Notes under the pieces: generated by a model
The model's database searches: none
What the model was told of the DNA's origin: nothing
What the model saw: only the letters and a program-made list of their open reading frames with translations
Program-made: the position numbers and the translations under genes
NCBI GenBank assembly: GCA_002269645.1
Contig: NIVC01000070.1
Coordinates: forward strand, 62,001-126,000
Reading direction: 5' to 3'
DNA length: 64,000 nt
Source of the DNA: Macrostomum lignano
Taxonomy: Eukaryota
Shown here: positions 19,800 through 52,735 of the stretch, piece after piece
Layout of the letters: each line of letters begins with the position of its first letter
Numbering within the stretch: the stretch's first letter is position 1

Positions 19800-20453
19800 T
19801 TATCTCAAAAGCCACATGCCGGAAAAAGAGATTCCAGTTAGCAGGGTTGGTGACATCACACCTGCAATTTGCAAGCAGCGCTTTAGTTACAGAACTCAGC
19901 GCTCAAGTCGCTGAGTAACCAATTCTACTTACTTAATCCGGGAACCGCTGTCGAGTTTTGGTTCGATAGACGAGCAGTTTCCAAATGGCAACGGGTTCCT
20001 GCATTTATTCAATCGATTTTTAAGACCAATTTTCTACTAAACAGAGGAAGTGCTACTGTTTCAGATATATTACCTGTATAACGGCCTGTACAGCTACAGG
20101 TAAAGTACGGATCGGTGTACGCCAGAGTGCAGGTGCCGCCATTCTGGCACACAGGCAGCTCAGTGATGCCCTTGTCAGGCTGCAGGGTGAAGCAGTAGTC
20201 TGCAGCTGATTCGCAGTACGGTGCAATGTAGGGCAGCGGGCAGAGGCAGGGTGGACTGTTTGTGAAGTTGTTGCAGGTGCCGCCGTTGTAGCAGGTGACT
20301 GTTGAGCAGTTCACAGCCTCAGTTTGAGCTGAAACGAGGTTGTTTAAAGACTGAAGTTCTTACAAGATTTCCTGCAAACCTTTATTGTTGACGATTTCTG
20401 GGACTCTGTCACTCACCTATTAGTGACAGTAGAATGCAAGCCATTGCCATCAT
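19800..20453 (-). CDS. EGF-EGF cluster gene g1: signal peptide, 2 EGF-like domains, short stalk, GPI-anchor-like C-terminus
   Basis: Exons 20453-20417 (MMAMACILLSLI), 20328-20074 (EGF-EGF), 19998-19933 (GTRC...VPGL), 19861-19800 (SVMSPTLLTGISFSGMWLLR*); all GT-AG, phase 1. Confidence 0.78.
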
Positions 20454-21368
20454 TGATGCTTCTCCGCGCAAAGAGTGACTCACGTATCCTTTACTGTGTA
20501 AACCGTACTTGTTGTCCTTCTCAGTGAATACTCGCACACTGAACCTTTTGTATTTGGAATTCTGCGATATTAGCAGCATCCTTCACGTAAAAGTAGGTAG
20601 CTAAGCAAGCGTTCTTTTAATTACTGCTATTGAATATTTCAAGATCCTTCTTTAGGATTCTGATTGAGAAGCACTGATTTATTTCCCAGCTTAGCTGTCT
20701 CCTTCTCTCTAGTGTACTTTCTTACCTTGACTTCTTCTTACCCTTATCAACTCTCTCACTGCACTTCAATGGTGCGTTCATTTGGTCATTCAGCCAACAC
20801 TTCATTTCACTTCGTCTCTTCTCTCCTCTCCCCACAGTGCACACTTCGCACTCAGTGCTTCTTTGATCCAAAACTTCCTTCTTTTCATGCTCACATTCGC
20901 CCCAATCTATCCCGGGAAACAACACCAGAGAATGAACATTGATACCTGAGTAGAGCTATTCTAGATCTACATAGAATTATGCAACATTTGAAATAATGTT
21001 TAATGCATGTAAATATTTCAGTTCTGTGACTATGCCTTGTATCCTGCACTTTCTGTCCAAAACAAGTAGCAACGAATGCAAAAAAGTGCTCGACTTAAAA
21101 TGAGAAACGCGATCCGTTTATTCAGTTGAATACAAGCGCAGAAAAACAACAAAATTAGTTTAGGTCTACAGTGTAAACAGACAAAAGCATTTTAGAGGCT
21201 TACTCATAACTTTATCTGACAAGTTGGCTAAAAAGGTCAGAAGATCATAATCAAATTTACCGCACAAATTTTGCACTATAAAATGCTGGATTTCGAATCC
21301 AGACCCAAATATGCAGTAGATAAGAACTTGAAAGTTTATTAATTTAGGTACATCTGTCTGAAACATTC

Positions 21369-22780
21369 TCAAGATACTTTAAAGGCTTTGGTACACCAAG
21401 CGATGCCGTCCACTTTGACAATCAGCCCATCAAACTTGTGGTAATTATCACAGCCGATGTCGATACTCTGAAATAGAGGGTTTGAATTCAAAACTGTTTC
21501 AATGTTAAGAGAATCGATGTTATCAATGGTTCGATCAGTTTTCTTAAATCTGTGGTATTTTTTAAATCCCAAAAGCAGAACACCTGCACTTTATGAGGAT
21601 ACAACCAATTAAACAGATCTTGATTACAAAACGCAAAAAATGCGAGATCGCTTCTCACCTTATAGCAGCAGCTGATTTCAAAACTGCCAATTCCAAATAG
21701 TAAATGCTAGTACAACCTGAGCAGCAGAACGAATGTCGCACCGATAGCCACTGTTTGCCGACACAAATCTGAGGAAGTTCAGGAGTGTTCGGAATTTCTT
21801 AATCGAGCTAACCAGTTTTAATTTGCACCAATAAATTTTTTCAACTCTATTCGTTTTAAGTCCACCTACACCCTGCAGCATTAACACGGTTAGATCAAGG
21901 CATTTTAAAAACCTTTTCTTTACGGCCTACATAAAGACTAAAAAGATTTTATTTCAAAATCATAAATAGTAATCCCACCGGTTGCAGTGTCGGCAGCATT
22001 TTCTAAGTCTAGTTCTGTCGTTGTTGGTAGTGCAGTCTCAGTTGTAGCAGTCGATGTCGGTGCCGTTATCCCAGCTGTAGCAGTTGATGTTGGTACTGAT
22101 GTCCCAGCTGTAGCAGTCGATGTCGGTGCCGTTGTCCCAGCTGTAGCAGTCGATGTCGGTGCTGATGTCCCAGCTGTAGCAGTCGATGTCTGTGCTGATG
22201 TCCCAGCTGTAGCAGTCGATGTCGGTGCTGATGTCGATTGACTCGAAGTAGTGTCATCAGAGGTTGTCACGGTTTCGTTGCAACGATTTCCTGAAAAATT
22301 CGTTCATAAAAAATTTGCATTAGAATGAAACATTTGCTAATATTTCAACCTAACTAATACAAACCTGTGTACTCAGGTGGGCAGGTGCAATTGAAATAGG
22401 GATCAGTATAGGTCAGAGTGCAGTTGCCGTCATTCAGGCACACAGGCAGCTCAGTGATGCCCTTGTCAGGCTGCAGGGTGAAGCAGTAGTCTGCAGCTGA
22501 TTCGCAGTACGGTGCGATGTAGGGCAGCGGGCAGAGGCAGGGTGGACTGTCTGTGAAGTTGTTGCAGGTGCCGCCGTTGTAGCAGGTGACTGTTGAGCAG
22601 TTCGCAGCTTGTGATGGCGCTGCGAATGAATTAGTAAGAAAATAGAGTCTTACAAATAAGGCTGAATGGTTGCATGAATAAATGTACTAATTAATAAAAT
22701 CGCAGCAGAATCTGAACATGCTTACCAGCTAAATATAGAAAAAGTAGACATACTTTAGTCCCATTGGAAACAGTGGACAT
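21369..22780 (-). CDS. EGF-EGF cluster gene g2: signal peptide, 2 EGF, Thr-rich stalk (33-bp repeats), TM, cytoplasmic tail with NPLF
   Basis: Exons 22780-22726, 22619-22365, 22290-21979, 21768-21717, 21588-21369. TM VAIGATFVLLLSAGVLLLGF followed by KKYHRFKK. The last two exons are less certain. Confidence 0.72.
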
Positions 22781-23223: not shown

Positions 23224-25073
<1,850 letters not shown>

Positions 25074-26636: not shown

Positions 26637-27645
26637 TCAGCACCCGCAGCCGCGTGACTTTGCGTTCTGTTCCCCTTCAGGGTCTGTAACCTTCTGTAAC
26701 AGTAAGAGGTGAGATGATGCTAGCTAATAAATGGAAGAAAAAGACAATCGCAAATTTTCATTCTCAAAACTCACCTCAGTTCTTCCGGCTGGGTAAATAT
26801 AGAGAAAAAAGCTGCCGATGATGATGAACAGGACAGGTGCGCACACACCAATCACTACCTTGCTGGTTGTAGTCAGGCCGCTGTCTTGAGGAGATTAGGA
26901 ATAAGGAGCATGACATGAGCTTTTCAACTTTAAAAAATTGAAAATGGCAATTTTTTTTATTTTATGGCACAATTGATTACCGCAATCGTAGAGGCAGTAG
27001 GTTGGATTCGTTGGATCGTTGGATTCTGCATTCCAAACTTTATCACTACATCTGGTGCCTTAGTAAGAGGTGAAAGAGTTTAAAGAAATTTTTAATGGAG
27101 ATTTTGTGCATTAACCGAATTTTGCAATAAGAAAATATTTAAAAAAGGTTTTACCAGTATAACCGGTAGGGCAGCTGCAGTTAAAGTACGGATCGGTGTA
27201 AGTCAGAGTGCAGTTGCCGTCATTCAGGCACACAGGCAGCTCATTGATGCCCTTGTCAGGTTGCAGGGTGAAGCAGTAGTCTGCAGCAGATCGGCAGTAC
27301 GGTGCGATGTAGGGCAGCGGGCAGAGACAGGGCGGGCTGTCTGTGTAGTTGTTGCAGGTGCCGCCGTTGTCGCAGGTGACAGTTGAGCAGTTCGCTGCCT
27401 GAGTTGGTGCTGCAAATTTTATCATCTTCATTTTTTGGCAAGCTTTTATCACACAGTAACTGTGAAAATTCAGTTAGTTGCAGCAATGCTTTTCTACGAA
27501 TGTGAAAGAAGTGAAATTCAAGAATTCGATTGTTTTATTCTGCAAAGAAGTATTATGAAGAAGCTGCTTGGCTTAACTTACCAATTGCAAAAGATGATAA
27601 AACATGCAGACTGCCGGCAATGCGAATTAACTGCAGTGCTGTCAT
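26637..27645 (-). CDS. EGF-EGF cluster gene g4: signal peptide, 2 EGF, short Cys-containing stalk, TM, short tail ending GCGC*
   Basis: Exons 27645-27582, 27409-27155, 27058-26981, 26884-26775 (TM VVIGVCAPVLFIIIGSFFLYIY), 26693-26637. Confidence 0.8.
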
Positions 27646-29253: not shown

Positions 29254-32013
29254 CTAATAAAGTTGCGATGAGCTGCTCGGACTTCCATATACGTAGTGTG
29301 ACCATGGCATGTTCTCTTGAATCTGAAAGCAAAAAAAGAAAAAGGTTTAGTTCTTGAACCAAAAAGAGAAATATATATTTATAATATAAATTACCCTGGG
29401 CTGCCGTGGAGCCGTGGAACTATTCATTGACACAAAATTGTATATCGCAGCGATAAACAGGGTGACCGTCACCAACACTAACGGAAGAAAAACGCTGACA
29501 ATCATCAGCCCGATGTCCTCCCTCATGGTTGATGCTTTGATGCCTAGAGAAGTGTGAGTTTGGAATTATTATTCAGCGCTGAGCGTCATCTGAACTACTA
29601 GGGGGGACGATTGTCTCTCATGACAGTTTGACAACGTGACAAGTACAGTGTACCATAATAATACGTTATACTGCATCATTTAACCCATTAAAAATCCTAA
29701 ATGTCTTTTAATAATAGGCATAAATGCCAGCTAGATAGTTTGATACAGAACCCCCAGTTCTATCTAACCGATTTCAACAGGTAGGGAAAACTGTAGTAGC
29801 ATATAAAAATCCTTTCATTACCAAACGAATCGGCTGCAGGCAAGAAATGTCACGAAAATAAACTGGGTTTGATTTAGGCACTATTTCCCCTAACTTTATG
29901 CCAGTATCAGCATCATACATCTGTTGAAAGACTTACTTCTTGGTCTGGCCGTTGACATGACAACTTTTGAAGTAGGCGAATCACTTGTAGAACTAGTAAT
30001 TGTTGATTGAGTCGTCGCTTCTGACCACGACGATGTTGACTCAACTACCGGAGGCATTGACTCGGTGCTAACTGACGGCACCATGGTTGCTGTTGAAGTC
30101 GGAGGGGCTGTTGTTGAATCTTTAACTACTGTCGTTGAATGTGATGTAAGGTCTGTCAGTGGAACCGGTGTTGTATAAGAATTCGCGATTGATGCTGTCG
30201 ATGCCGCAGTCGCTGGGGAAAGAGTCGGCATTTCAGAACTCTCGCTTGTAGACGCAAGTGTTGAAGAAATCACTGGAGACGTCGAAACTGCTTGAACCGT
30301 TGAAGCGGTGCTATACACAGGTGACTCTACGGTGGTTGATTTTAATTGAGTCGGTATTGATGAAAAATCTGTGGCTGATTCTGTCGTTGCTGAAACAGTT
30401 GGCAGGGCAGTAGATGCAGACTGAGCAGGAGTTGCTAGAGCAGATGTAGTTGCATCAGGTGTTGTTGAAGCAGCTGTTGCATCAGTTGTTGCATCAGGTG
30501 TTGTTGAAGCTGCTGTTGCATCAGTTGTTGCATCAGGTGTTGTTGAAGCTGCTGTTGCATCAGTTGTTGCATCAGGTGTTGTTGAAGCTGCTGTTGCATC
30601 AGTTGTTGCATCAGGTGTTGTTGAAGCTGCTGTTGCATCAGTTGTTGCATCAGGTGTTGTTGAAGCTGCTGTTGCATCAGTTGTTGCATCAGGTGTTGTT
30701 GAAGCTGCTGTTGCATCAGTTGTTGCATCAGGTGTTGTTGAAGCTGCTGTTGCATCAGTTGTTGCATCAGGTGTTGTTGAAGCTGCTGTTGCATCAGTTG
30801 TTGCATCAGGTGTTGTTGAAGCTGCTGTTGCATCAGTTGTTGCATCAGGTGTTGTTGAAGCTGCTGTTGCATCAGTTGTTGCATCAGGTGTTGTTGCACC
30901 AGGTGTTGTTGCACCAGGTGTTGAAACATCAGGTGCTGTTGCACCAGGTGTTGAAACATCAGCTGCTGTTGCACCAGGTGTTAAAACATCAGGTGTTGTT
31001 GCACCAGGTGTTGAATCAGCAAGTGTTGTTGCACTAGGTGTTGAATCATCAGGTGTTGTTGTACCAGGCGTCAAAGCAAAAGTTGTCGCGAGATCAAGTG
31101 TTAGTGAAACAGGTGTTAGTGCATCAGGTGTTGATGGAGCAGTTGCTATTTCACCAGGTGTTGAATCATCAGATGTTGAGGCATCAGATGTTCCTAGAAA
31201 AGCTGTTGTTGCATCAGGTGTTGCTGCACCAGGTGTTTGATAATCAGATGTTGTTTCAGCAGGTGTTAAAATATCGCTCGTTGAGGCTTCTGTTGTTGCT
31301 GATAAAGATGATGATGTCTCATTAGCTGAGTCTCCAGCAGCTACAGTGCCCGTGTATGGGTTAGTCGCTGTTTCAGTGTTGATTGTTGTTTCAATTGTTG
31401 AATTATCAATTTCACAGCGCGGACCTGAAAACCGTAAATATGAAATTACGAGCCGTATATATTTTAATGCTTTGATTTCGAGTTCACGTACAGAGTATGA
31501 CCGAAACTCGTTTTGGTCATACTCAAAACTACATGAGCAGCTAAAGGTGTAATCCAGTGTACAAGTAAGATAGAAAAGCATATGTAATGTTTCTCGATAC
31601 AAAATATTTCAACCGAACCTGTGGACTCAGGTGGGCAGGTGCAATTGAAATAGGGATCAGTATAGGTCAGAGTGCAGTTGCCGTCATTCAGGCACACAGG
31701 CAGCTCAGTGATGTTCTTGTCAGGCTGCAGGGTGAAGCAGTAGTCTGCTGCTGATTCGCAGTAAGGTGCGATGTAGGGCAGCGGGCAGAGGCAGGGCGGG
31801 CTGTCTGTGAAGTTGTTGCAGGTGCCGCCGTTGAAGCAGGTGATTGCTGAGCAGTTGGCAGCTTGTGATGCTGCTGCAATCAGTTGAATAGGGTTTTACT
31901 TGTCTATTAAAGTGGAATGCCAAAAGAGTGATCAGAAAGTTTTTTCAAAAGGCCTCACTTGAGCAGAAAGTCAACATGACGGTCAGTGCTATGCAGAGTT
32001 TTGCCGCAGCCAT
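29254..32013 (-). CDS. EGF-EGF cluster gene g5: signal peptide, 2 EGF, about 500-aa mucin stalk, TM, short Tyr-containing tail
   Basis: Exons 32013-31959 (MAAAKLCIALTVMLTFCS), 31873-31619, 31424-29937 (mucin, about 11 x TTPDATTDATAAS), 29543-29395 (TM), 29322-29254 (...YVYGSPSSSSQLY*). Confidence 0.85.
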
Positions 32014-36800: not shown

Positions 36801-39800
36801 AGCTCTTTAATGTTTGACATGGTGGCTCTTCTATGTTTGGCATGGTAGCTCTTTAATGTTTGACATGGTGGCTCTACTATGTTTGCCATGGCGGCCCTTT
36901 TACGTTTGAAATGGTGTCTCTGTTATGTTTGACATGGTGGCTTAGTTGTTTGACATGGTGGCTCTTCTATGTTTGACATGGTGGCTCTTCTATGTTTGAC
37001 ATGGCGGCCCTTTTACGTTTGACATGGTGGCTCTTTTATGCTCGACATGGTGGCTCTTTTTTGTTTGACATGGTGGCTCTTTTATGTTTGACATGATGGC
37101 TCTTTTATGTTTGACATGGTGGCTCCTTAATGTTGAACATAGTGGCTCTTTAATGTTCGACATGGTGGCTCTTTTATGCTTGACATGATGGCTCTTTTAT
37201 GTTTGACATGGTAGATCTTTTATGTTTGACATGGTGGCTCTTAAATGTTTGAAATGTTGTCTCTGTTATGTTCGACATGGTGGCTCTTGAATGTTTGACA
37301 TGGTGGCTCTTTAATGTTTGATATGGTGGCTCTTTTATGTTTGACATGGTGGCTCTTTTATGTTCGACATGGTGGCTCTTTAATGTTTGACATGGTGGCT
37401 CTTTAATGTTCAACATGGTGGCTCTTTTATGCTCGACATGGTGGCTCTTTTATGTTTGAAATGTTTTCTCTGTTATGTTCGACATGGTGGCTCCTTAATG
37501 TTGAACATAGTGGCTCTTTAATGTTCGACATGGTGGCTCTTTTATGTTTGACATGATGGCTCTTTTATGTTTGACATGGTAGATCTTTTATGTTTGACAT
37601 GGTGGCTCTTAAATGTTTGAAATGTTGTCTCTGTTATGTTCGACATGGTGGCTCTTGAATGTTTGACATGGTGGCTCTTTAATGTTTGATATGGTGGCTC
37701 TTTTATGTTCGACATGGTGGCTCTTTTATGTTCGACATGGTGGCTCTTTAATGTTTGACATGGTGGCTCTTTAATGTTCAACATGGTGGCTCTTTTATGC
37801 TCGACATGGTGGCTCTTTTATGTTTGAAATGTTTTCTCTGTTATGTTCGACATGGTGGCTCTTGAATGTTTGACATGGTGGCTCTTTAATGTTTGACATG
37901 GTGGCTCTTTTATGTTTGACATGGTGGCTCTTTTATGCTCGACATGGTGGCTCTTTTTTGTTTGACATGGTGGCTCTTAAATGTTTGACATGGTGGCTCT
38001 TTAATGTTCGACATGGTGGCTCTTTATTGTTTGACATGGTAGCTCTTTTATATTTTACTTGGTGGCTCTTTAATGTTTGACATGGTGGCTCTTCAATGTT
38101 CAACATGGTGGCTCTTTAATGTTCGACATGGTGGCTCTTTTATGTTTGACATGATGGCTCTTTTATGTTCGACATGGTGGCTCTGTTATGTTCGACATGG
38201 TGGCTCTTGAATGTTTGACATGGTGGCTCTTTAATGTTTGACATGGTGGCTCTTTTATGTTCGACATGGTGGCTCTTTTATGCTCGACATGGTGGCTCTT
38301 TAATGTTTGACATGGTGGCTCTTTTATGATTGACATGGTGGCTCTTTTATATTTTACTTGGTGGCTCTTTAATGTTTGACATGGTGGCTCTTCAATGTTC
38401 AACATGGTGGCTCTTTAATGTTCGACATGGTGGCTCTTTTATGTTTGACATGATGGCTCTTTTATGTTCGACATGGTGGCTCTGTTATGTTCGACATGGT
38501 GGCTCTTGAATGTTTGACATGGTGGCTCTTTAATGTTTGACATGGTGGCTCTTTTATGTTCAACATGGTGGCTCTTTTATGCTCGACATGGTGGCTCTTT
38601 AATGTTTGACATGGTGGCTCTTTTATGATTGACATGGTGGCTCTTTTATGTTTGAAATGGTGGCTCTTTTATGTTTGAAATGGTGGCTCTTTTATGTTTG
38701 AAATGGTGTCTCTTCTGTGTTCGACATGGTGGCACTTTTATGTTTGGCATGGTGGCTTTTTTATATTTGACATTGTTCTTCTTTTATGTTTAGCATTTTG
38801 TGTTTTAAAGTGTTTTAATAAAAAAATGTTTTTGCACTACTAAGATTCGAACCCAGGTCGCTACATTAGCAGTCCAGTCTGTTCGCATCTTGGCTATCTC
38901 TTTTCAATTGGAGAACATGAATTGTGGCCCTTATAATTCAATTCTTATAGCAAGTCAGTTAGAGTAAAAAGTTATGACATAATCAATTTCTCAGTCAGCC
39001 AGTATCAGTCTCAATTCAAGTTAGAAATATGGTTACGCATTTACATTCAAGTCTTGTGTGCATTTTTTCGACACTGTTTTCATCTTGTTGTGATGCAATC
39101 TTTATCACAATTGAAATTCAGTCAGTCAGTTTTTTCTTTCGCATTTTTACAATGCATTTCAGGTCGAAAGAGCTGCTTGACCTTTGCAAAAAAGCATGTT
39201 TTTCGAATATTTAATCCCTTTAAAATTGAGCAATTTCTTAGCCAAGATGCATGTACCGTCCCAGGAAAATTTCTGATCAAATGGTGCAAGTTTGAAGAAA
39301 ATCGGTTGAGCCATTTTTTCTGATATCTATCGCATAGCTAGTTAGTTACAGACATTTCATTTTTAGTATATAGGATTTGCTTTGCCTAATTGGCCTTTAA
39401 ATTTTACTCATAGCTTATAAACCCAAGTATAGTTATAGGTATAATATAGCCTAGCAAAGCTTTTCATTAGCTTAGCTTTCTTAACTTTAGTGTCCAAGAC
39501 TTATATTATGGCTATAATGGACTTGCCACCTAGGCTATCTTATCCAACTATTCTAAATGTCTTTTTATTCTATTATTATATTCTATTTAAATATTATTTA
39601 GGACTCTATTATTTAAAACCATAATATAGCCTAAATCATAATTTATTTAGTGTCTTTAGTAGGCATAATGCACCTTTTCATGATCAATTTTGATCAAAAT
39701 CCAATTCTAAAAAACTAGCAGAAATTCAATTTAGACAATTCAGACTAGGCCTAGCCGCCTAGGGCAATACTTGTGGAAAATCAATAAAACAAAATCTAGT

Positions 39801-42209
39801 TTAAAAAATTCTGCACCAAAGCAAGGTTTAGCCATAAATAAAATTGTCCAGTTGAATTTCTGCTAGTTTTTTAGAACTGGACTTTGATCAAAATTGAATG
39901 TAAAAAGGTATAATAACCAAATATTGTCTTATATAGTATATATTATAGTTTAAACTAAGAATTTTTATGCTGGTTACATGACCTTTACTAAGTAAGTTAG
40001 TCTAAAGATAAAAGTCCTTAGCCTATTTCTATATTTTAGTTTTGAGTTATAAAATTGGATTTTAACTATACTCAAATAAGAATCATTAAATTAAGTTTAA
40101 CTAATTACAAAGCCTAGTAGAGCCAAACTAGAAGTAAATTTGATCATTGGCCCCTAATCTATACTATAGAATAAGTCTAATGATAATGGTAAGTTATCTT
40201 GGTTATTGCATAAATTTTGTAATACTATTAGTAAATAGATCAGCCTAGACCTAGTTAGGAATTATATGCTTGATGACTTTAATATATAGCCAAGGGCAAA
40301 AGGTAATGTCATTGCTAAGTCATTTACTATGTAGCCTTATTTTAGAATGAGTTTTAAATAGGCATATGATTAATATGTTCTTTTCTTTTACCTATCTCTA
40401 ATAACAAAACTATTTTAATTTTTCCAGCTCAACAGACCAGCAAAGGAGCAGCAGCCCATCCAGGGTCCTAAGGAAGCAAGGAAGAACCAATGGCCCAATT
40501 TATTGCTACAAAAACAGACCAGCTCAACAGACTGATTTATTTATTGCTGCAAAAACGTATTTCCTCACCATAATCCTAAAATGCATTAGCTCTAATTAAT
40601 TCATTAAAATATAAATAGTATCTTGAGTCTTGCTAAAAATGTTGTCAATTTAATGTTTTGTTGAAGTGGTTGTTTGCAATTGGCATAAGTTGGTTTTGTT
40701 TTCTGAACTTGTTTGTTATTTTCTAATGGGCAAGTGTGTATTTATGTGTATGAGGGAATCAATTAACTGAGTACTCTACTCTCCTATGAAACAAAAATCA
40801 ATGCAGTATACTAATTGTATGTATTACTAGTAGTAGCAAGATAAAAAGCGAAATTATAATCAGAATTGCTTAAGCAAATTGTAATTTGATTGCCAATCCT
40901 CTTGTGCTAATTACAATTTAATTGTCACAATTGCAATCTAATTGTAATCTGCTTGTCGAGATTGCAATTTAATTATAATTTGCTTATCAAGATTGACAAT
41001 CAATTGCCAATTAATTTGCAATAATTGCCCAATTTTGCAAATTCAATTGTAATTAATGCGCAATTATCACTATTTTGGGCGTCTTGGGACTGAAGCAATG
41101 CAGAGTTAAGTGTTTTGCTCAAGGACACAAATTGTTCCAGTGGGATCGGGAATCGAACCCCCACCTTCAAGTTGAGTCCGACGCTCTAACCACTAGGCTA
41201 CAACCCCTAGGTATACCCTAGTGTATACCAACTTGTTTGATAAGATACACTAGCAGAATAGAACTTGTTATCCAGCGCAGTGCTTTTTATGTGCCAGTGG
41301 CCCGGCTCGATTCAAAATGCAGTCTAAGCTAATGCACTGATTTGGGACTAAATTGGAATCTCGACTTGGCTCTGCTCGTGCAATTAGCGCTCTTGAGGGC
41401 CAACACCCAAAGCACAGTGAAGCGTACATGCTTAACGATAAATAAAGTTAGAGCCACTGAACACTCGTGTGAGTGTTGCCTGTGCGTATGACTGCGTACG
41501 TATCCACGCGCTTGTGTGCCTGCTCAGGGGAATCGGTGGAATGGGCAGCAATGCCTCTGGCCGGTTGTGTGACAATGTCGCTTAAAGTGCGCCAGGGTGC
41601 ACACTCCGCTCTGCCTCTTAACTTATGACAAAACTATGCAAACATTTGGTCATGTACTGTTAAGGTACAGATCTGTAAGCTCAATTCACTCAGCCCACTA
41701 TACTAACTATCCATATATTCTAGTATACGTAGAAGAAGCAAATAGAAGCCTTTTTTTATCAAAGAGATCGGCTTGATTTTACCTTCGTAGCCATCAGGAC
41801 AGCTGCAGGAAAAGAACGGATCGGTGTATGTCATAGTGCAGTTGCCGCCATTCTTGCATACAGACAGCTTATTGATGCCCTTGTCAGGCTGCAGGGTGAA
41901 GCAGTAGTCTGCAGCTGATTCGCAGTACGGTGCGATGTAGGGCAGCACGCAGAGGCAGGGCGGGCTCTCTGTGTAGTTGTTGCAGGTGCCACCATTGTAG
42001 CAGGTAACTGCTGAGCAGTTAGCAGCTTCGACATTGTCTAAGATGCGTTAATTATGATAATATGTGGTTTTCAACATGATTAGTCAGAATATCTCGAATA
42101 ATCATTATTTTCTGATGTACAAAAAAATTAAAAATGCATTGAAAATTTGAATTTCTTCGTGATTCTTACCGAATGCAGTTAGGAGAGTGAAGAAAATGAG
42201 TAGCAACAT
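33896..42209 (-). CDS. EGF-EGF cluster gene g6: signal peptide, 2 EGF, very short stalk, TM, long tail with two Tyr motifs; 7.3-kb transposon-filled intron
   Basis: Exons 42209-42170 (MLLLIFFTLLTAF), 42037-41783, 34509-34474 (GFRCNERHKEDD), 34392-33896 (TM, KRK, tail with AVYAVVQK and VVYAMPQK). Confidence 0.78.
34600..34801 (-). mobile_element. 3' half of a family-A CORE SINE interrupted by the CMC-like element
   Basis: Reverse complement aligns with 17951-18135. Confidence 0.85.
36060..36500. repeat. 18-19-bp minisatellite (gatagcaagcatccccca)n
   Basis: Direct; internal to the CMC-like element. Confidence 0.93.
36615..38770. repeat. 23-bp minisatellite (ttatgtttgacatggtggctctt)n with higher-order duplications (about 368-bp and about 300-bp blocks)
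   Basis: Direct; ORFs 37174..37416 and 37542..37784 are near-identical at an offset of 368. Confidence 0.95.
38834..38896 (-). pseudogene. tRNA-like fragment or SINE head (A-box, GCT loop, B-box, downstream T-run)
   Basis: Minus strand TAGCCAAGATG...CTGGA CTGCTAA TGTAG...CTGGG TTCGAAT CTTAG; no acceptor stem, so not a functional tRNA. Confidence 0.45.
39671..39910. mobile_element. Older copy of the 224-bp MITE
   Basis: caccttttcatgatcaattttgatcaaaatccaattctaaaaaactagcag... with an inverted end; homologous to 42732-42955. Confidence 0.7.
41089..41207 (-). mobile_element. 5' half (tRNA head + CORE start) of the interrupted family-A SINE
   Basis: GGGGTTGTAGCCTAGTGG (A-box)...GGTTCGATTCC (B-box)...gtgtccttgagcaaaacacttaactctgcattgcttcagt. 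Confidence 0.85.
41290..41625 (+). mobile_element. SINE family B, diverged 5'-truncated copy
   Basis: Aligns to 58360-58670. Confidence 0.8.
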
Positions 42210-42731
42210 ATCCTGCGACAGTTTTGTAGAGTAAAGCATGGAATTTGGCCGCAGATGTTTTTCTCTGCACAAACTTCTCTTTTTCTACTGGCTTCTTTTT
42301 AACTGTGACTCATGTGACACAATGCGCATCTGTCTGCCTTTTAATACGCTTTGTGTGTTGTTATTGCCGCTAGGTACGAGTTTACCCTTATGTACATTTA
42401 CTTGGAATAAATGCAAGAAACTTTCATACTCTCTAACAAAACAACGAATTGTACAGTTTTTAATTTTATAACTTACGGAGGCAAACTGCTTTTGAATTTT
42501 AAATAGTACTCTCGAGTTTCTAAGCTACATCCCTGTTTCTAGAAAAGATCGTACATGATGCAATGTAAATAATGCTTTTGAGTAAATGATCAGAGACGTC
42601 AAGTTATGGTATAACCAATACGACAAGTACGAGCGTACTCGGCGGCGAATGCATTTTAGAAGTAATATAGTTATCAGCGCTGCAGCAGTTAGAGCGAGTG
42701 AGTCTTGGTTATATTACAGTTAGGGATGTTA

Positions 42732-42955: not shown

Positions 42956-43840
42956 TATTATTAATAGACTCGTGATGCGCGAGGGAAGTTTCTAGAATGT
43001 TACTATATTTGGCATACGGGGAGAGCGTAGAATTTTCCAGAACAATGTTAGTATACATTAAAAATGGCTACTACTGTGTGTAACACGTTTTTCTGAAATC
43101 TAAAACAGATTTGATGGCTTCGCCACCAAGCTGTGAGCACAGCTGACGAAACTATGGGTCCATCCGCAAGCGAGGGAGGCTTCCGTTGCCTCTCAGGGCG
43201 TCGTGGGTTGTCCGACCCGTAGGGCGGTGGCTGTGGAAATTCTCCCCCGTATACCGGCTTGGAGCTGCCGGCTGGGGTTTCGGGTGCACCGCAGTCGACG
43301 GCATGTCGGCTTGCTGAGTTAACAGCGCTCCCGGTTTGATGTCCTCCACCAATGCATGGCGTGGTTGAAGCCGGTCATAGTGCCACCCCACCGGGTTGGA
43401 CCGCTTTGTTTTTTATTGTCACCATACATACCCATATGTAACGAATAAATCCAAAGATTTCCACTCTCATAAAACAACTTAATTGTACGCGAGAAAACAG
43501 CCATTGATTTTCTATCTTACGGAGGCAGACTGCTTTTGAATCTTTGGTACGCTTAGGTAGAAGATCGTGTATGCTGCCGTCTAAAGCAGGGCAGGGTAGA
43601 CCTAAAAAACGGCTGCAAATAATATACCTTTTTGCGATCTAGTTTGCCAAAACTGCAATCAATTTTGCCCGCGGAAAATTATCACTTATAATTTTGCTGT
43701 CTAGGCCAAGTCTGCTGAGTCATGACCAGAGTTTCAGCCACAGACAACTCTTTGAAAACTGCAATCAATTTTGCCAAAACTGCGACCTAGTTTGCCCATG
43801 GCAAGCCAAGAAGAATTTTTATTGAGAATCAATTCGGAAG

Positions 43841-48348: not shown

Positions 48349-49419
48349 GGGAGTGTGACGAAATAAACTGTAACAGTGAACAATAAACAGCGAGTTTATA
48401 ATGGTGGACGTAGGCACACATGCTCTCAATCATAGCATTGTTAAGGGACCTCCGCTTGGCACCTCCGCGAGGCAGAGGCTCCATACGACCGGTTGCGTTG
48501 AATTGTCCAACTATGTAAGTCACGGTTCTTCGTGAGATGCCCAACAGCCTACCGAAATCTTGCCAGTCCTCTCCACCCTGATATGCTTGAATCAATCGCT
48601 GCCGGTCCTTCGCTGAAATCCTGTTATAAGGTCCACGGTGGGCCATTCTTTGATCTTGCTATGTATGTCTGTGGTGTTTTCTTTGCTATGGGCAAACTAG
48701 GTCGCAGTTTTGGCAAAATTGATTGCAGTTTTCAAAGAGTTGTCTGTGGCTGAAACTCTGGTCATGACTGAGCAGACTTAAGTAGCAAAGACAGCAAAAT
48801 TATAAGTGATATTTTTCCGCGGGCAAAATTGATTGCAGTTTTGGCAAACTAGATCGCAAAAAGGTATGTACCGTAACTGCATGCAGTAGCTTTTAAAGGA
48901 ATTTTATTAAAATGGAGGCTAAAATCAAAATAAATTACTAAAAAGAATAGATTTTTATCACAAAACACGATACAATTTTTAATTTTTGGAAAATTAATTA
49001 TCCGAGTGCTCAATATCGCAGATAGAAACTCTGCATTTGTTAATCATATATTGGATGATTCCTAAAAATTAAATATAAGTTTTCGCAGGAGGACTCTACC
49101 AATCCACCAACCTGCCTTGGTGGATTTTTGTGCACAAGCCCAAAATGATTGCGCCCGCACACGCGGAATCGAACCAGGGGTCGTGGCGCTGAGCTCTTCT
49201 GTGCCCCACCCCCGTTACCGCTCGACGAATTCTCATCTTCTGAAAAATATTTTCCAAAACACTCGATTTATGGTTCTACAGAGTTATGAATAAATGCAGC
49301 TAAACCCGTGCCGGAAGATTCAAGACTTTACGTTGCATTACAACAAATGTTTTTTTGTTTAAATTGGTCAGCATGCACCATTAGTAATGAAGTGCAAGAT
49401 TTGTTCCATTCAGTAGGGC

Positions 49420-50054: not shown

Positions 50055-50195
50055 AGGGCGCCCCTGTCTCTTGGGTGGGCGCCCCTGTCTCTTAGGTTGG
50101 CATCGCCGTCTCTTAGGTGGGCGCCCCTGTCTCTTGGGTGGGCGCCCCTGTCTCTTAGGTGGGCGCCCCTGTCTCAGGTGGGCGCCCCTGTCTCT
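50055..50195. repeat. 21-bp minisatellite (gcgcccctgtctcttaggtgg)n, probably inside a decayed hAT-like non-autonomous element ending near 50326-50345
   Basis: Direct repeat; followed by a poly-C...gcatacgccac end resembling the 56768 element and a tggcaaccct hAT-like end. Confidence 0.75.
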
Positions 50196-51093
50196 TAAGG
50201 GGTTTCGTCGGGTTTGGCTGCCTCTTTTGTTAATTTTTGGAGGAGCGCAACGTTCTCTGGGAGCGGTATTTTTGTCGGATGATCGCGGGACCACTGCCCC
50301 CCCCCCTGGCCCTTTGCATACGCCACAAGAAGAGTGGCAACCCTTAAAATACAGTACAGGTGGATTAGACTAATTTTTTGCCAAAAGCATTGCATCAAGT
50401 AGGATTTTGCCCCAAAAAATTCTAAAAAGAATTCTTTTTTAGAAGCTGTAAGTTTGTTTGAATTTGCTTGCTTGCCAGTCTAGAGTAGTACTTTTCCAAA
50501 GCCAAATTTGATAAGCTTGTGAAAGACAAAACGGCATGCTGGCTTTAAATGATCCTCGGAAATTGCCATAACAGGTTTTCATACTATTAAATTGATCAAA
50601 TAACATCATACTGAAGTATTAACTCTTAGTGTGTTTTCCTACATTCCGAGTAGAATGAATACAGCAAATCAAGGCACCACATTTTCAATTAGTTCCTTTT
50701 CCGGCACAAAACATGGCAGTAAATTAATACAACTTTCTGCAGCCAACCGTGAAGCTCGGTGCATACGAGCTAATTAATTTAGCTTTTTGTTGCACGAGCT
50801 CGCAGAGTTCCTGCAAAACAAAACTAGCTATCTATTCAATATAATGTATAATCTAAATCGAACCTGGAATCGTCAAAAGCTACACTTGCATTCAATAAGT
50901 GCCGCTACCCAGCTTTTTGACGTTACTATTTAACACTTTCATTTGCAAATTTAGTGAACAAAAGAAATATGCTGCTGCAAAAAGTTGTCAATGGATTTAT
51001 ACAAATGCCATGACAGGTTGAGGCGTTTCCTAATTATCAAAATTGTTGCATAAATTCAGCAACTCAGCATAGCGTTCCATTAGTTTACAAAGT

Positions 51094-52735
51094 TCAGATT
51101 GCATGAGAATTGAAGTCTGATTCGCAGCCCTCCTCCCAGACGTATCTGGTCCTGTCGCCGCTTCGAGAGGTCTGAAATCATTTGAGAATTGTATTTTACT
51201 TAGCAAATATTGTATAAATATAACCTCTCAAATATTCTCTTGGAGACTTTTTGGGATCAAATCAGTATTTTTAAAAAATCATTTGAAACTCATATCGTTA
51301 CGTATACTATATGATGTGAATATTTAAACAAACTCTATTTATTTTGGCCTGATGAATATGCGCAGACATTGTCAAGACATCACAACAAAAGTTTAAACTG
51401 AAATATGTTGATAATAGAATGCGCTAGTTTCTATTTCGCATAAATATTTCTCAATAAAAGCTTCAAAAAAGTCAGAAAAAACAACCATTTTTTTCGAAAT
51501 TCTGCAAAGCGATGCGGTAGAAGTGTTAAAAATCGGATGAAGCTGCGCAATTTTTTCTCCATTTGTCTCTTTTTAGCCTAAAAGTCTGGCAAAATGACTG
51601 CATTGCAGCATGCAAGCTATGCGAGAATTACCACACAGGAAATAACATTCTATTGTAGAACTCATTCCAGCCTCTTTCAGGCTCATAATAACAAGTACAA
51701 GCAAGGTTTTTTACCTTCTGGCGATTGCGACAACGAGCAGCAAAAACGATGGCAGCCGCTATGGCAGCAATTATCACCACGGCGATTGGGACTCCAACAC
51801 TGACGGATATGAGTAACACAACTCCCATCGTTTCATGCCAACCGGATGTAGTCAGGTCTGCAGAATATTTAATTGAATGTCACTTAAAAGTGCAGTTAAA
51901 TCTGCCTAATATTTTTTCATGAACAAGCAATGATCTTTATCAACTCACTTGCAACGCTAGTGCTGACTACTTCGGTAGATTTTGTTTCGGTTGAAAAGTT
52001 CGGGCTTGTTCCGCCGTCAGATGGTAGCGTAGTAGCTTCCGGTATTGGTTCCGCATGCTCGCAACGTAGCCCTGAATTTCGGAGATTTCTTACATTAACC
52101 TAAACAATTTGACTGAAATCATGCTAATTAATTGATTACCATAAAAGCCAGGTAAGCAAGAGCAGTTAAAATATGGGTCAGCGTAAGTCAGCGTGCAGTT
52201 GCCGTCATTCAGGCACACAGGCAGCTCAGTGATGCCCTTGTCAGGCTGCAGGGTGAAGCAGTAGTCTGCGGCAACACGGCAATATGGTGCAATGTAGGGC
52301 AGCGGACAGAGGCAGGGCGGGCTGTCTGTGAAGTTGTTGCAGGTGCCACCGTTGTAGCAAACTGCGGAGCTGCATGTCGCCCGTTTCTGTCTTGAAAGTG
52401 CGCTGAACTCGTCTGCAGCTACTGAGGAAGCTGAAATACAGAGTTCAGAGTAGGACTAGGGCTTAGATAGATGTTTTGCGCACAGCAATTGACATGTATA
52501 CAATTATTGCGTGCATCTTAGCCAAGATATAGTGCCCTTCTACAACGTACATTTCCCTTTATAAGTGTGTTTTTTCGACTTTCCTTTAGCAAGAACCTCA
52601 GGCCTTTGAAATCCTTTCAGGGTACCAAAGTCACTGAGCTCTGTGTGTACGAGCCTATGTCAGTAAATACGCTCGTAACGTAATATACTTACCGACAATA
52701 AATAAGGATAGAATCAGAAGCTGATATGAGTACAT
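51094..52735 (-). CDS. EGF-EGF cluster gene g7: signal peptide, short pro-segment ending RQKR, 2 EGF, stalk, TM; tail exons uncertain
   Basis: Exons 52735-52693 (MYSYQLLILSLFIV), 52430-52140, 52071-51949, 51857-51715 (TM). The tail is either 51649-51617 (NVISCVVILA*) or 51649-51632 + 51171-51094. Confidence 0.75.

What the first reader, a model, noticed from the sequence alone, without database searches (positions are those of the whole stretch)
19800..52735. Tandem cluster of seven EGF-EGF surface proteins with a shared head and unrelated anchors and tails
Seen: seven co-oriented genes with one exon plan (signal exon, phase-1 exon of 255-291 nt encoding two EGF-like domains, stalk exon beginning GxRC, anchor, tail). 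The EGF pair is nearly constant ([13 protein letters not shown]...[15 protein letters not shown]...). Signal peptides, stalks (12-496 aa), anchors (GPI-like or TM) and tails cannot be aligned by eye. EGF2 has an unusual 14-residue insert between C1 and C2. Inference: a lineage-specific family that presents one ligand-binding or ligand module with different reach, anchoring and intracellular output, like paired-receptor or adhesion clusters but with the variability reversed (constant head, variable tail). I do not recognise it as a described family.
Basis: partly seen in the sequence, partly recalled or inferred. Interest (0 to 1): 0.82.

Follow-up and report, generated by a model that had tools for sequence, protein, structure and literature searches.

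The report
Flatworm EGF-pair surface protein gene cluster
Seven neighbouring genes of the flatworm Macrostomum lignano encode small surface proteins with nearly the same two-EGF "head" on unrelated stalks, anchors and tails; the genes are real and found only in this species so far, but they are already in GenBank as unnamed models and their function is unknown.

Summary
Observation confirmed. The window is Macrostomum lignano assembly Mlig_3_7, contig NIVC01000070.1:62001-126000. On the minus strand, 19800-52735, lie seven co-oriented genes with one plan:
- a signal exon (phase 0 to 1);
- one 255-291 nt phase 1-1 exon encoding two EGF-like domains;
- a stalk exon starting G-x-R-C, which supplies the last cysteine of EGF2;
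- a transmembrane (TM) helix or a C-terminal hydrophobic anchor;
- tails that cannot be aligned.

My spliced models of E2, E4 and E6 are identical to the RNA-seq-derived GenBank proteins PAA91826, PAA91827 and PAA91829.

Paralogue DNA similarity ends within 14 nt of the EGF exon borders. For that exon dS is 0.08-0.55 and dN/dS about 0.27. Variable sites form a mosaic (PHI-type test, p=2e-4), and genes at the same position in two other assembly copies disagree. Together this indicates purifying selection plus gene conversion limited to that exon.

The head exon shares its intron positions and phases with exon 2 of a large multi-EGF membrane protein (Mlig002106), which is its likely source.

Every strong relative looked up, among 1.84 billion representative proteins, is from M. 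lignano. No paper found mentions these genes.

Function was not tested. The most likely reading is surface glycoproteins that show one binding head at different heights and anchorings. An EGFR-ligand role is a minority possibility. Interest is moderate.

The parts
19800..20453 (-). Gene E1, 139 aa: signal, EGF pair, 22-aa stalk exon, C-terminal hydrophobic (GPI-like) tail
   Evidence: Exons 20453-20417, 20328-20074, 19998-19933, 19861-19800, all GT-AG. It is not in the GenBank annotation. The older UniProt fragments A0A1I8GV65 and A0A1I8JHD1 match its exons at 87-100%. This is the least supported of the seven models.
21707..22780 (-). Gene E2, 227 aa: signal, EGF pair, Thr/Ala/Ser-rich stalk with 33-bp repeats, GPI-like tail DLCRQTVAIGATFVLLLRLY
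   Evidence: Exons 22780-22726, 22619-22365, 22290-21979, 21768-21707. The model is identical to PAA91826.1 (Mlig012253.g2), and the GenBank gene range is the same. The stalk repeat array was found.
23224..25073 (-). Gene E3, 221 aa: signal, EGF pair, short stalk, TM, Ser-rich acidic tail
   Evidence: Exons 25073-25001, 24742-24485, 24374-24333, 23674-23535, 23376-23224. It is not annotated on this contig. PAA70917.1 (Mlig012253.g1), the transcript-derived model on assembly copy C, has the same joins and matches the window exons at 98-100%.
26637..27645 (-). Gene E4, 187 aa: signal, EGF pair, Cys-containing stalk, TM, 27-aa tail ending CGC
   Evidence: Exons 27645-27582, 27409-27155, 27058-26981, 26884-26775, 26693-26637. 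The model is identical to PAA91827.1 (Mlig004709.g2), and the GenBank gene range is the same.
29254..32013 (-). Gene E5, 671 aa: signal, EGF pair, about 500-aa mucin-like stalk (39-bp repeats), TM, 41-aa tail
   Evidence: Exons 32013-31959, 31873-31619, 31424-29937, 29543-29395, 29322-29254. The GenBank gene spans 32118-29254 and gives 706 aa. That equals my 671 aa plus 35 codons read from a CAG acceptor at 32119. My exact 706-aa string was not found in the collection. The copy-B orthologue is annotated at 670 aa.
33896..42239 (-). Gene E6, 285 aa: signal, EGF pair, 12-aa stalk exon, TM, 132-aa tail with a duplicated Tyr motif; intron 2 is 7.3 kb
   Evidence: Exons 42239-42170, 42037-41783, 34509-34474, 34392-33896. 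The model is identical to PAA91829.1 (Mlig032151.g2). In assembly copy B the whole gene spans only 1.8 kb.
51094..52735 (-). Gene E7, 225 aa: signal, 17-aa pre-head ending RQKR, EGF pair, stalk, TM, 34-aa tail
   Evidence: Exons 52735-52693, 52430-52140, 52071-51949, 51857-51715, 51171-51094. It is not in GenBank. The older UniProt models A0A1I8G2J7 and A0A1I8G8U7 show the same EGF-stalk-TM-tail joins but lack the N-terminus.
20074..20328 (-). EGF-pair exon of E1 (255 nt, phase 1-1)
   Evidence: Against E2 it has only 2 differences in the first 165 nt of the 237-nt core but 23 in the last 70, a mosaic pattern.
22365..22619 (-). EGF-pair exon of E2 (255 nt)
   Evidence: It is 96% identical to the E5 exon (dS 0.08), yet the flanks do not align.
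24485..24742 (-). EGF-pair exon of E3 (258 nt)
   Evidence: The acceptor AAAG|GT is the one used in PAA70917.1.
27155..27409 (-). EGF-pair exon of E4 (255 nt)
   Evidence: Its positional orthologue in copy C differs at 16 of 237 sites and is slightly closer to E3 (15 differences).
31619..31873 (-). EGF-pair exon of E5 (255 nt)
41783..42037 (-). EGF-pair exon of E6 (255 nt), the most divergent head in the window
   Evidence: Identity to the copy-B orthologue is 86.7%. The signal, stalk and TM/tail exons of the same gene are 95.7-100% identical.
52140..52430 (-). EGF-pair exon of E7 (291 nt), with the pre-head motif ALSRQKRATC
   Evidence: The motif and the exon borders match exon 2 of Mlig002106 (ALSRVRRATTC).

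Best explanation
This is a tandem array of seven separately expressed genes of a family so far found only in Macrostomum. The products are small secreted-pathway membrane glycoproteins.

Architecture of each protein:
- a signal peptide;
- an N-terminal head of two non-calcium-binding EGF-like domains encoded by one phase 1-1 exon (the last cysteine of EGF2 comes from the next exon);
- a stalk of 16 to about 500 residues, mucin-like in E2 and E5;
- a single TM helix (E3-E7) or a C-terminal hydrophobic, GPI-like peptide (E1, E2);
- a short cytoplasmic tail that cannot be aligned between paralogues.

Shown:
- The gene structures, and transcript support for E2, E4 and E6.
- The head exon is homologous at exon level to exon 2 of a large multi-EGF membrane protein of the same species with a laminin-G-like region (Mlig002106). 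It has the same phases, the same split three residues before C6, and, in E7, the same R-x-K/R-R motif just before EGF1.
- Only the head exon stays similar between paralogues.

Inferred:
- The family arose by duplication of that head exon into a minimal signal/stalk/anchor gene, followed by tandem duplication.
- The head is kept uniform by purifying selection (dN/dS about 0.27) together with gene conversion that starts and ends inside the only stretch still similar enough to pair.
- Everything else drifts, or is remodelled by repeat expansion and insertions.

Inferred function: the proteins display one common binding module on the cell surface at different distances, with different anchoring, shedding and cytoplasmic output. 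That module probably recognises the same partner as the head of the large multi-EGF proteins. The partner is unknown.
For: Gene models:
- All exon borders are GT-AG with consistent phases.
- E2, E4 and E6 are identical to PAA91826.1, PAA91827.1 and PAA91829.1.
- The GenBank annotation of Mlig_3_7 comes from a genome-guided RNA-seq assembly that uses trans-splicing and poly(A) evidence (PMC5730564).
- The window is 100% identical to that contig.

Head:
- Pfam EGF (PF00008) scores above its cut-off for EGF2.
- Both domains show the six-cysteine spacing.

Concerted evolution:
- Paralogue blastn hits cover only the EGF exon, ending within 14 nt of its borders.
- dS is 0.08-0.55 within the cluster, against about 1.0 to the distant subfamily member P0156.
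- Variable sites form a mosaic.
- PHI-type permutation test: observed 0.23 against 0.40 in permutations, p=2e-4; 209 of 528 site pairs are incompatible.
- Positional orthologues in copies B and C differ at 0-8 of 237 sites. The exceptions are E6 (31 differences; the copy-B exon is nearest to E3) and copy-C E4 (15-16 differences from the E4 exons of copies A and B; 15 from E3).
- Between the two E6 copies the EGF exon is 86.7% identical, while the other coding exons are 96-100%.

Origin:
- Mlig002106 exon 2 is 282 nt and phase 1-1. It encodes ...ALSRVRRATTC, the EGF pair, and ...GFEG; exon 3 starts G|VRC.
- The profile hit to this protein has E=7e-23.

Restriction to this species: every strong or full-length hit that I looked up is M. 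lignano, and the non-Macrostomum hits looked up are generic multi-EGF proteins.

Anchors and stalks: hydropathy and Ser/Thr/Pro content and tandem repeats.
Against: - No expression, localisation or binding data could be found.
- E1, E3 and E7 are not in the GenBank annotation of this contig. E1 has only fragmentary older models, and its EGF exon was not found in the part of copy C examined.
- GPI anchoring of E1 and E2 is unverified; their terminal hydrophobic stretches are weak.
- The AlphaFold2 model of the head was poor (pLDDT 48), so the fold rests on sequence pattern alone.
- Around the 5' half of E6, introns are also about 11% diverged between copies A and B. Part of the E6 discordance could therefore be an old haplotype rather than conversion.
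- Other Macrostomum species and most flatworm genomes could not be searched at DNA level. 'Macrostomum-restricted' means 'not seen elsewhere in the protein libraries'.
Confidence: 0.6

Rival explanations
1. The proteins are membrane-tethered EGFR (ErbB) ligand precursors. The membrane-proximal EGF2 would be the receptor-binding growth-factor module, released or presented like TGF-alpha, Spitz, neuregulin or planarian Smed-egf-1 to -5. On this reading the cluster is a Macrostomum-specific ligand expansion.
For: - From C2 onward, EGF2 has ligand-type spacing (x5, x10, x1, x8). Its motifs CLNDGxC and GYxGxRC resemble human EGF CLHDGVC and GYIGERC (sequence; the human sequence is from memory).
- With an EGF2-only profile, the single-domain PDB hits Spitz (E=1.7e-4, 24.4 bits) and heregulin/NRG1 (E=2.2e-4, 24 bits) score above the best single Notch repeat (20.3 bits).
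- The architecture signal / EGF / short stalk / TM / tail fits E3, E4, E6 and E7.
- Barberan et al. 2016 (PMC4914847) report 8 EGFRs but only 2 EGF ligands in M. lignano. Their screen required 'only one EGF motif', which would have excluded this family.
Against: - The C1-C2 loop is 14 residues, not about 7.
- The position five residues after C6, where human EGF has a binding-critical Leu47, is variable (A, T, S, W, S, K, P in E1-E7).
- An extra, equally conserved EGF1 carries an O-fucose-type site, which is typical of Notch-like repeats.
- The best single-domain match is a mussel foot protein, not a growth factor.
- The head is shared with large multi-EGF proteins that have a laminin-G-like region and do not look like ligand precursors.
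- Some members have 100-500-aa mucin stalks or GPI-like tails.
Confidence: 0.15
2. The proteins are structural or protective surface-coat (glycocalyx) or adhesive proteins. The Tyr-rich, heavily glycosylated EGF pair would be a stable cap with no specific partner, and the mucin stalks would do the work.
For: - The best single-domain PDB match, and one of the two best full-length matches, is Perna viridis foot protein 5, a two-EGF adhesive protein. The EGF2 domain hit is E=5e-8, 35.7 bits, with no gaps. The whole pair gives E=5.6e-6.
- The heads carry 2-5 N-x-S/T sequons.
- The E2 and E5 stalks are 52-56% Ser/Thr/Pro with tandem repeats.
Against: - A passive cap would not need 54 invariant positions out of 92 or dN/dS of 0.27.
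- Most members have short, non-mucin stalks.
- The tails are long enough to carry sorting or signalling motifs (E6).
- The known M. lignano adhesive proteins are large and unrelated (general knowledge; PMC6410801 was listed but not read).
Confidence: 0.15
3. The proteins are decoys or modulators of the large multi-EGF/laminin-G-like (Notch/Delta-like) membrane proteins. The small proteins would compete for, or co-present, the partner of the shared head, as DLK1 or DOS-motif proteins modulate Notch.
For: - The head is homologous at exon level to that of Mlig002106.
- EGF1 has an invariant C2-x4-T-C3 motif (the O-fucose consensus). EGF2 has C5-xxG[YF]TGxxC6 (the O-GlcNAc consensus) in 5 of 7 genes. 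The motifs are read; the consensus rules are from general knowledge.
- The PDB profile search lists POFUT1 and POGLUT1 substrate EGFs and DLK1 among its hits.
Against: - There is no hit to a DSL domain, and none to the Delta/Jagged EGF domain in the small proteins.
- The large relatives themselves are uncharacterised, and their heads lack the O-fucose Thr.
- There are no functional data.
Confidence: 0.1
4. Annotation artefact: the EGF exons belong to one long multi-EGF gene, or are alternative exons, or several copies are dead.
For: - An older database model (P0006) reads the E3 EGF exon straight into the E2 EGF exon.
- About 7% of assembled M. lignano transcripts are multi-gene precursor mRNAs, later resolved by trans-splicing.
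- E1, E3 and E7 are missing from the GenBank annotation.
Against: - RNA-seq-derived models give separate proteins for E2, E4, E5 and E6.
- Every gene has its own ATG/signal exon, anchor and stop codon.
- All seven reading frames are intact, with canonical splice sites and dN/dS well below 1.
- The orthologues of E3 and E4-E6 are annotated as separate genes in copies B and C.
Confidence: 0.04

Closest known systems
M. lignano large multi-EGF membrane proteins with a laminin-G-like region (e.g. PAA59849.1 Mlig002106.g5; PAA90322.1 Mlig031842.g2; auto-named 'Delta-like protein' in UniProt)
   Same: - They carry the same N-terminal EGF pair with a long C1-C2 loop in EGF2. Mlig002106 also shares ...PPCICPLPYIPPYC and ...YCSQLQPD....
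- In Mlig002106 the pair lies in one phase 1-1 exon, the next exon starts G-x-R-C, and an R-x-K/R-R site sits just before EGF1, as in E7.
   Different: - They have 700-1300 residues, with many further EGF repeats and, in PAA90322.1, a sub-threshold laminin G Pfam hit. The cluster genes keep only the head.
- They are themselves uncharacterised.
Membrane-anchored EGFR ligands (TGF-alpha, Spitz, neuregulin; planarian Smed-egf-1 to -5, PMC4914847)
   Same: - They share the layout signal / EGF / juxtamembrane stalk / TM / short tail.
- EGF2 has the same C2-C6 spacing and the GYxGxRC motif.
- Spitz and NRG1 are significant single-domain hits (E about 2e-4).
   Different: - This family has two EGF domains, not one.
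- Its C1-C2 loop is 14 residues.
- It has no conserved Leu after C6.
- Some members have mucin stalks or GPI-like ends.
- Receptor binding is untested.
Paired immune receptor clusters (KIR, LILR, SIRP; from general knowledge)
   Same: They are tandem clusters whose members have near-identical ectodomains but different TM segments and cytoplasmic tails, with ectodomain similarity maintained by gene conversion.
   Different: - Those heads are Ig domains, not EGF.
- No ITIM and no charged TM residue is seen here. The E6 motifs EAVYAVV and EVVYAMP do not fit the ITIM consensus.
- There is no evidence of activating/inhibitory pairing.
Perna viridis foot protein 5 (PDB 7qab)
   Same: It is a small protein made of two tandem EGF-like domains. 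Its EGF2 aligns without gaps from C2 to C6, with a Tyr-rich 10-residue C3-C4 loop.
   Different: - It is a secreted adhesive from a mollusc, with no stalk or anchor.
- It lacks the long C1-C2 loop.
- The similarity is at domain level, not orthology.
Head-on-mucin-stalk type I proteins (thrombomodulin/CD93/endosialin; fractalkine; from general knowledge)
   Same: A globular N-terminal binding head sits on an O-glycosylated Ser/Thr/Pro-rich stalk, followed by a TM helix and a short tail. This matches E2, E5 and E7.
   Different: Their heads are a C-type lectin domain plus EGFs, or a chemokine domain. There is no sequence relationship.
Plasmodium MSP1-19 / MSP8 / MSP10 (double EGF, GPI-anchored; from general knowledge)
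   Same: They have two tandem EGF-like domains next to a GPI anchor, as proposed for E1 and E2.
   Different: They come from an unrelated lineage and did not appear in any search here. In those proteins the EGF pair is membrane-proximal and C-terminal.

Membership tests
EGF-like domain superfamily (Pfam PF00008 / PF07974) | Six cysteines with EGF spacing in each module | tested here: met
   EGF1 is C-x4/5-C-x5-C-x8-C-x-C-x8-C. EGF2 is C-x14-C-x5-C-x10-C-x-C-x8-C. All twelve Cys are invariant in the seven genes.
EGF-like domain superfamily (Pfam PF00008 / PF07974) | Profile score above Pfam's gathering cut-off | tested here: met
   For EGF2, PF00008 scores 22.1-25.5 bits against a cut-off of 21.5 in E2, E3, E4, E6, E7 and the consensus. 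E1 scores 21.2, just below. E5 gives no hit at E<=0.01. EGF1 gives only sub-threshold hEGF hits.
EGF-like domain superfamily (Pfam PF00008 / PF07974) | EGF fold with 1-3, 2-4, 5-6 disulfides | tested here: inconclusive
   The AlphaFold2 model built on the 7-sequence alignment has mean pLDDT 48 and pTM 0.31, which is not usable.
Calcium-binding EGF (cbEGF) | D/N-x-D/N-E/Q-x-C start and a hit to the EGF_CA profile | tested here: not met
   The modules start AAN-C and AADY-C. No EGF_CA hit appeared in any Pfam scan.
EGFR/ErbB ligand family | A single EGF motif in the precursor (the criterion of PMC4914847) | tested here: not met
   There are two EGF modules per protein.
EGFR/ErbB ligand family | Spacing C-x7-C-x4-5-C-x10-13-C-x-C-x8-C | tested here: not met
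   EGF2 fits from C2 onward (x5, x10, x1, x8), but C1-C2 is 14 residues.
EGFR/ErbB ligand family | Conserved Gly and Arg before C6 (G-Y-x-G-x-R-C) | tested here: met
   The final Gly and the R-C are invariant across the seven genes. The earlier G-Y/F is kept in four of them (GY in E3, E4, E6; GF in E7). The motif is also common in non-ligand EGFs.
EGFR/ErbB ligand family | Conserved hydrophobic residue five positions after C6 (Leu47 of human EGF) | tested here: not met
   The residues are A, T, S, W, S, K, P in E1-E7.
EGFR/ErbB ligand family | Binds and activates an EGFR | not testable with these tools
   This needs binding and ERK assays, or at least complex modelling with the eight M. lignano EGFR ectodomains.
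DSL/DOS Notch ligands (Delta, Serrate, DLK1) | DSL domain, or Delta/Jagged-type first EGFs | tested here: not met
   No DSL hit appeared. PF21700 (EGF_DL_JAG) is absent from the small proteins and is sub-threshold (19.2 bits against 27) in Mlig002106.
GPI-anchored proteins (E1, E2 only) | C-terminal hydrophobic signal preceded by small omega-site residues, with no cytoplasmic tail | tested here: inconclusive
   The hydrophobic stretch is at the extreme C-terminus, with 0-1 residues after it. It is weak (19-residue Kyte-Doolittle mean 1.2-1.3). No GPI predictor was available.
Mucin-stalk type I membrane proteins | Ser/Thr/Pro-rich tandem-repeat stalk between head and TM | tested here: met
   The E2 stalk is 56% S/T/P with a 33-bp repeat (6 copies). 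The E5 stalk is 52% S/T/P with a 39-bp repeat (12.5 copies). E7 is 40% and E3 62%, both short. E4 and E6 are not mucin-like.
Paired receptors | ITIM in one partner, and a charged TM residue in the other | tested here: not met
   No charged residue lies in any TM core. The E6 Tyr motifs do not match [SIVL]-x-Y-x-x-[IVL].

The most novel reading that the evidence does not exclude
The cluster, together with the paralogues elsewhere in the genome, is a Macrostomum-specific expansion of membrane-tethered EGFR ligands. An earlier survey would have missed them because it required a single EGF motif. On this reading, these genes supply the 'missing' ligands for the eight EGFRs of M. lignano. Different stalks, anchors and tails would set the range, shedding and reverse signalling of one receptor-binding head.
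Probability: 0.13. Interest if true: 0.65.

Novelty: new variant of a known kind. Interest (0 to 1): 0.4.

Why it matters
If the reading holds, three things follow.

1. It is a clean natural example of a single exon kept uniform across a gene cluster by conversion and selection while the rest of each gene diverges beyond recognition. This bears on how modular surface proteins evolve and on how paralogue trees can mislead.

2. It shows a large adhesion or signalling protein giving rise to a family of minimal 'head-only' proteins.

3. M. lignano is a transgenic, RNAi-amenable model for regeneration. A single dsRNA against the shared exon (79-96% identical between genes) could knock down the whole family. 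That makes function, including the possible link to its oversized EGFR repertoire, directly testable.

The limits are also clear. The gene models already exist in GenBank, the domain type is ordinary, and lineage-specific EGF-protein clusters are common in invertebrates.

Tried and rejected
1. Structure. AlphaFold2 on the seven-sequence head alignment gave pLDDT 48. I therefore ran no fold search.

I used exact cluster look-up instead.

3. Expression. The gene IDs Mlig012253, Mlig004709, Mlig032151, Mlig017144, Mlig022199, Mlig032612 and Mlig012473 were searched in full text and in the held supplements of four M. lignano papers. There were no hits, and one of the four papers has no supplements held.

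4. Possible EGF2 relic in E5 intron 2. The peptide TCTLDYTFSCSCSFEY at 31566-31519 gave tblastn E-values of 0.026-0.94. I rejected it because DNA local alignments to all seven exons score no better than shuffled controls.

5. 'One long gene.' Rejected; see the rival explanations.

6. Calcium-binding EGF and DSL/DOS membership. Tested and not met.

7. Whole-gene recent duplication as the cause of low dS. Rejected. E2 and E5 have dS 0.08 in the exon, yet no alignable intron or other exon apart from a shared 12-mer just after the donor.

8. The first word-indexed protein search found only five fragmentary UniRef models. The exhaustive HMMER search was needed to find the full-length models.

Full report
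**Identity of the window.** A protein search with the EGF pair returned only Macrostomum lignano entries. An exact look-up of one family protein placed it on GenBank assembly GCA_002269645.1 (Mlig_3_7), contig NIVC01000070.1. The fetched locus is 100% identical to window 11707-32780 in reverse orientation, so window position = record position - 62000. Around the cluster lie:
- a myosin heavy chain gene (1-11869, minus strand);
- a Ty3/gypsy-type retrotransposon;
- a CUB-domain exon at 62.3-62.7 kb.

**Checking the observation.** Six-frame searches find exactly seven copies of the EGF-pair reading frame, all on the minus strand.
- A DNA alignment shows a sharply bounded conserved block. It is preceded by AG and followed by GT, and the flanks do not align.
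- Downstream of every block an exon begins, after AG, with G-x-R-C. This supplies the sixth cysteine of EGF2.
- Upstream of every block there is a short ATG exon with a hydrophobic core and a phase-1 GT donor.
- I assembled all seven coding sequences. Every junction is GT-AG and every frame closes on a stop codon. The proteins are 139, 227, 221, 187, 671, 285 and 225 aa.
- EGF exons are 255 nt (five genes), 258 nt and 291 nt. Stalk exons are 36-1488 nt. The outer limits are 19800 and 52735.

- An exhaustive HMMER search of 1.84 billion representative proteins recovered full-length family models.
- My E2 model is identical to PAA91826.1, E4 to PAA91827.1 and E6 to PAA91829.1. The E6 match includes its 7.3-kb intron.
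- The GenBank gene for E5 has the same end. Its length (706 aa) equals my 671 aa plus 35 codons read from a CAG acceptor at 32119. A start at an acceptor would fit a trans-spliced 5' end, but I did not test this.
- The GenBank annotation of this assembly was derived from a genome-guided RNA-seq assembly (StringTie, TACO and the TBONE pipeline, using trans-splicing and poly(A) evidence). Transcripts overlapping repeats were removed (PMC5730564). The three exact matches therefore count as transcript support. The repeat filter could also explain why E1, E3 and E7 are absent.
- E3 has an identical-structure, transcript-derived model on another assembly copy (PAA70917.1; 98-100% identity over all exons).
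- E7 has older partial models with the same downstream joins.
- E1 has only fragments.
- One older database model wrongly reads from the E3 EGF exon into the E2 EGF exon (P0006). This shows how the 'one long gene' reading can arise, but the RNA-based models contradict it.

**What the proteins look like.**
- Both head modules have canonical six-cysteine EGF spacing. EGF2 has a 14-residue C1-C2 loop.
- Pfam EGF passes its cut-off for EGF2 in most members. No other domain is found in any member.
- Neither module has the calcium-binding consensus.
- By inspection, EGF1 carries an invariant C2-x4-T-C3 motif (the O-fucose consensus), five of seven EGF2 modules carry C5-xxG[YF]TGxxC6 (the O-GlcNAc consensus), and each head has 2-5 N-x-S/T sequons, several of the form N-C-S/T. 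The consensus rules are from general knowledge.
- E3-E7 have strong TM segments. E1 and E2 end in a weak hydrophobic peptide with nothing after it.
- The E2 and E5 stalks are mucin-like tandem repeats.
- Tails are 27-132 residues and do not align with each other.

**Why the head is constant.**
- Between paralogues, blastn finds only the EGF exon. The alignments end within 14 nt of its borders.
- Synonymous divergence in the exon is low. The mean dS is 0.37, with 0.08 for E2/E5 and 0.13 for E3/E4. Mean dN is 0.10, so dN/dS is about 0.27. Against a distant subfamily member 110-130 kb further along the same contig, dS is about 1.0.
- A whole-gene duplication recent enough to give dS 0.08 would leave introns about 92% identical, and they are not. 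So the exon itself has moved or been converted.
- The variable sites form a mosaic. For example, within the 237-nt core, E1 matches E2 over the first 165 nt with only two differences and then departs.
- A PHI-type permutation test is significant: observed 0.23 against 0.40 in permutations, p=2e-4.

**Evidence from other copies of the cluster.** The assembly holds two further copies (L003 = copy B; L004 = copy C).
- Genes at the same position in different copies differ at 0-8 of 237 sites in the EGF exon.
- E6 is an exception, with 31 differences. The copy-B exon is closest to E3.
- Copy-C E4 is another, with 15-16 differences from the E4 exons of copies A and B and 15 from E3.
- Between the two E6 copies the EGF exon is 86.7% identical, while the signal, stalk and TM/tail exons are 95.7-100%.
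- I read this as purifying selection on the protein plus gene conversion confined to the only segment still similar enough to pair.
- One caveat applies. The 5' half of E6 sits in a block that is generally more diverged between copies A and B, with introns about 88-89% identical.

**Where the head came from.**
- Below the family proper, the profile search hits large M. lignano proteins (700-1300 aa) that start with the same EGF pair and continue with many more EGF repeats. The complete models (P0018, P0080) also have a laminin-G-like region and a TM segment.
- I fetched the gene of one of them, PAA59849.1 (Mlig002106.g5). Its exon 2 is a 282-nt phase 1-1 exon encoding ...ALSRVRRATTC, EGF1, EGF2 and ...GFEG. 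Exon 3 begins G|VRC.
- That is the same exon architecture as in the cluster. E7 even keeps the pre-head motif ALSRQKRATC.
- The R-x-K/R-R motif is a furin-type site by general knowledge. In both protein classes the mature N-terminus would then lie just before EGF1.
- The cluster genes are best seen as 'head-only' derivatives of such a gene.

**Function.** Nothing here measures it.
- With the whole-pair profile, PDB hits are led by Notch EGF repeats and by a two-EGF mussel foot protein.
- With an EGF2-only profile, the best single domain is the mussel protein (35.7 bits). Next come Spitz and neuregulin (24 bits, E about 2e-4), and then single Notch repeats (about 20 bits).
- An EGFR-ligand role therefore cannot be excluded. 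It is made more intriguing by the report of 8 EGFRs but only 2 ligands in this species, from a screen that required a single EGF motif (PMC4914847).
- Several features argue against it: the long C1-C2 loop, the variable position corresponding to Leu47 of human EGF, the conserved extra EGF1, the mucin or GPI-like members, and the shared ancestry with large multi-EGF proteins.
- My preferred reading is a set of surface glycoproteins that present one binding head at different heights, anchorings and cytoplasmic couplings. Its partner is unknown.

**Novelty and verdict.**
- The genes are already deposited as hypothetical or 'EGF-like domain-containing' proteins. I found no publication on them.
- The domain type and the type I/GPI architecture are ordinary.
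- The distinctive points are the restriction to Macrostomum, the exon-limited concerted evolution and the derivation from a large protein's head exon.
- I rate it a new variant of a known kind, of moderate interest.
The functional interpretation is plausible but unproven, and the comparison with paired receptors was the wrong way round.

Noticed in passing
window 43624-48867: An LTR retrotransposon (Ty3/gypsy-type gag-protease-RT-RNaseH-integrase ORFs at 44022-47968, GC about 60%) has 181-nt LTRs that are 99% identical (43841-44021 and 48168-48348). It sits inside an element with roughly 180-250-nt terminal inverted repeats (43624-43804 / 48683-48867, 98-99% complementary) and a transposase-like HTH ORF (48344-48646). 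The whole insertion lies between E7 and E6 and is absent from assembly copy B.
   Followed up: partly
window 34801-41388 (E6 intron 2): About 6.6 kb present here is absent from copy B, where only 64 bp separate the blocks that flank this stretch here. It includes a 23-bp satellite of about 96 copies (36575-38791) and an 18-bp array (36066-36378). The gene model still splices across it.
   Followed up: partly
window 26637-26693 (E4 last exon): The last exon is open in two frames. After the TM exon it reads KVTDPEGEQNAKSRGCGC*. From an internal acceptor at 26668, joined in phase 1, it reads ERKVTRLRVLMLLALLQLKNQ*. That second reading is a GPI-like tail identical to the C-terminus of the older UniProt model A0A1I8G253. 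TM and GPI isoforms may therefore both exist.
   Followed up: partly
window 33909-34054 (E6 tail): A 72-bp tandem duplication gives two copies of a motif: NNPPDAEAVYAVVQKKAKIPES and NNQPDAEVVYAMPQKRAKIPYVF. Each copy has an acidic stretch followed by Tyr. The motifs look YxxPhi- or YxxP-like and are not ITIMs.
   Followed up: no
window 52380-52430 (E7): Only E7 keeps a 17-residue pre-head segment ending in RQKR (furin-type) just before EGF1. The same feature occurs in the large multi-EGF relatives (RVRR, RQRR, RARR).
   Followed up: partly
window 18266-18532 and 56873-57253: Arrays of the same 21-bp unit (CTCATTTTGGCGCCGCAGGCA and its reverse complement) lie in inverted orientation on either side of the cluster. 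Similar arrays occur in the other assembly copies.
   Followed up: no
window 61907-62681: A CUB-domain exon and a following Ser/Thr-rich exon (minus strand) lie 9.5 kb upstream of E7. They are about 80% identical to the N-terminus of the older model A0A1I8G2J2, which fuses CUB, mucin, an EGF pair of a divergent subfamily and a TM segment. Whether the CUB gene here is ever joined to E7 is unknown.
   Followed up: no
L002 (NIVC01000070.1:232120-254245): A divergent family member (PAA91831.1, head CKANTCKNGGTC...) lies 110-130 kb beyond the window on the same contig, next to a multi-CUB gene. dS to the cluster heads is about 1.0.
   Followed up: partly
L004 versus window 20354 and below: Collinearity of assembly copy C with the window ends just upstream of the E1 EGF exon, and no E1-type EGF exon was found in the fetched part of copy C. 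E1 may be missing or displaced there.
   Followed up: no
window 1-11869: A striated-muscle-type myosin heavy chain gene lies on the minus strand (GenBank model 1954 aa, running off the window). Long microsatellites lie nearby: (ATAG)n at 3309-4747, and elsewhere (TGAC)n at 54568-55688.
   Followed up: no
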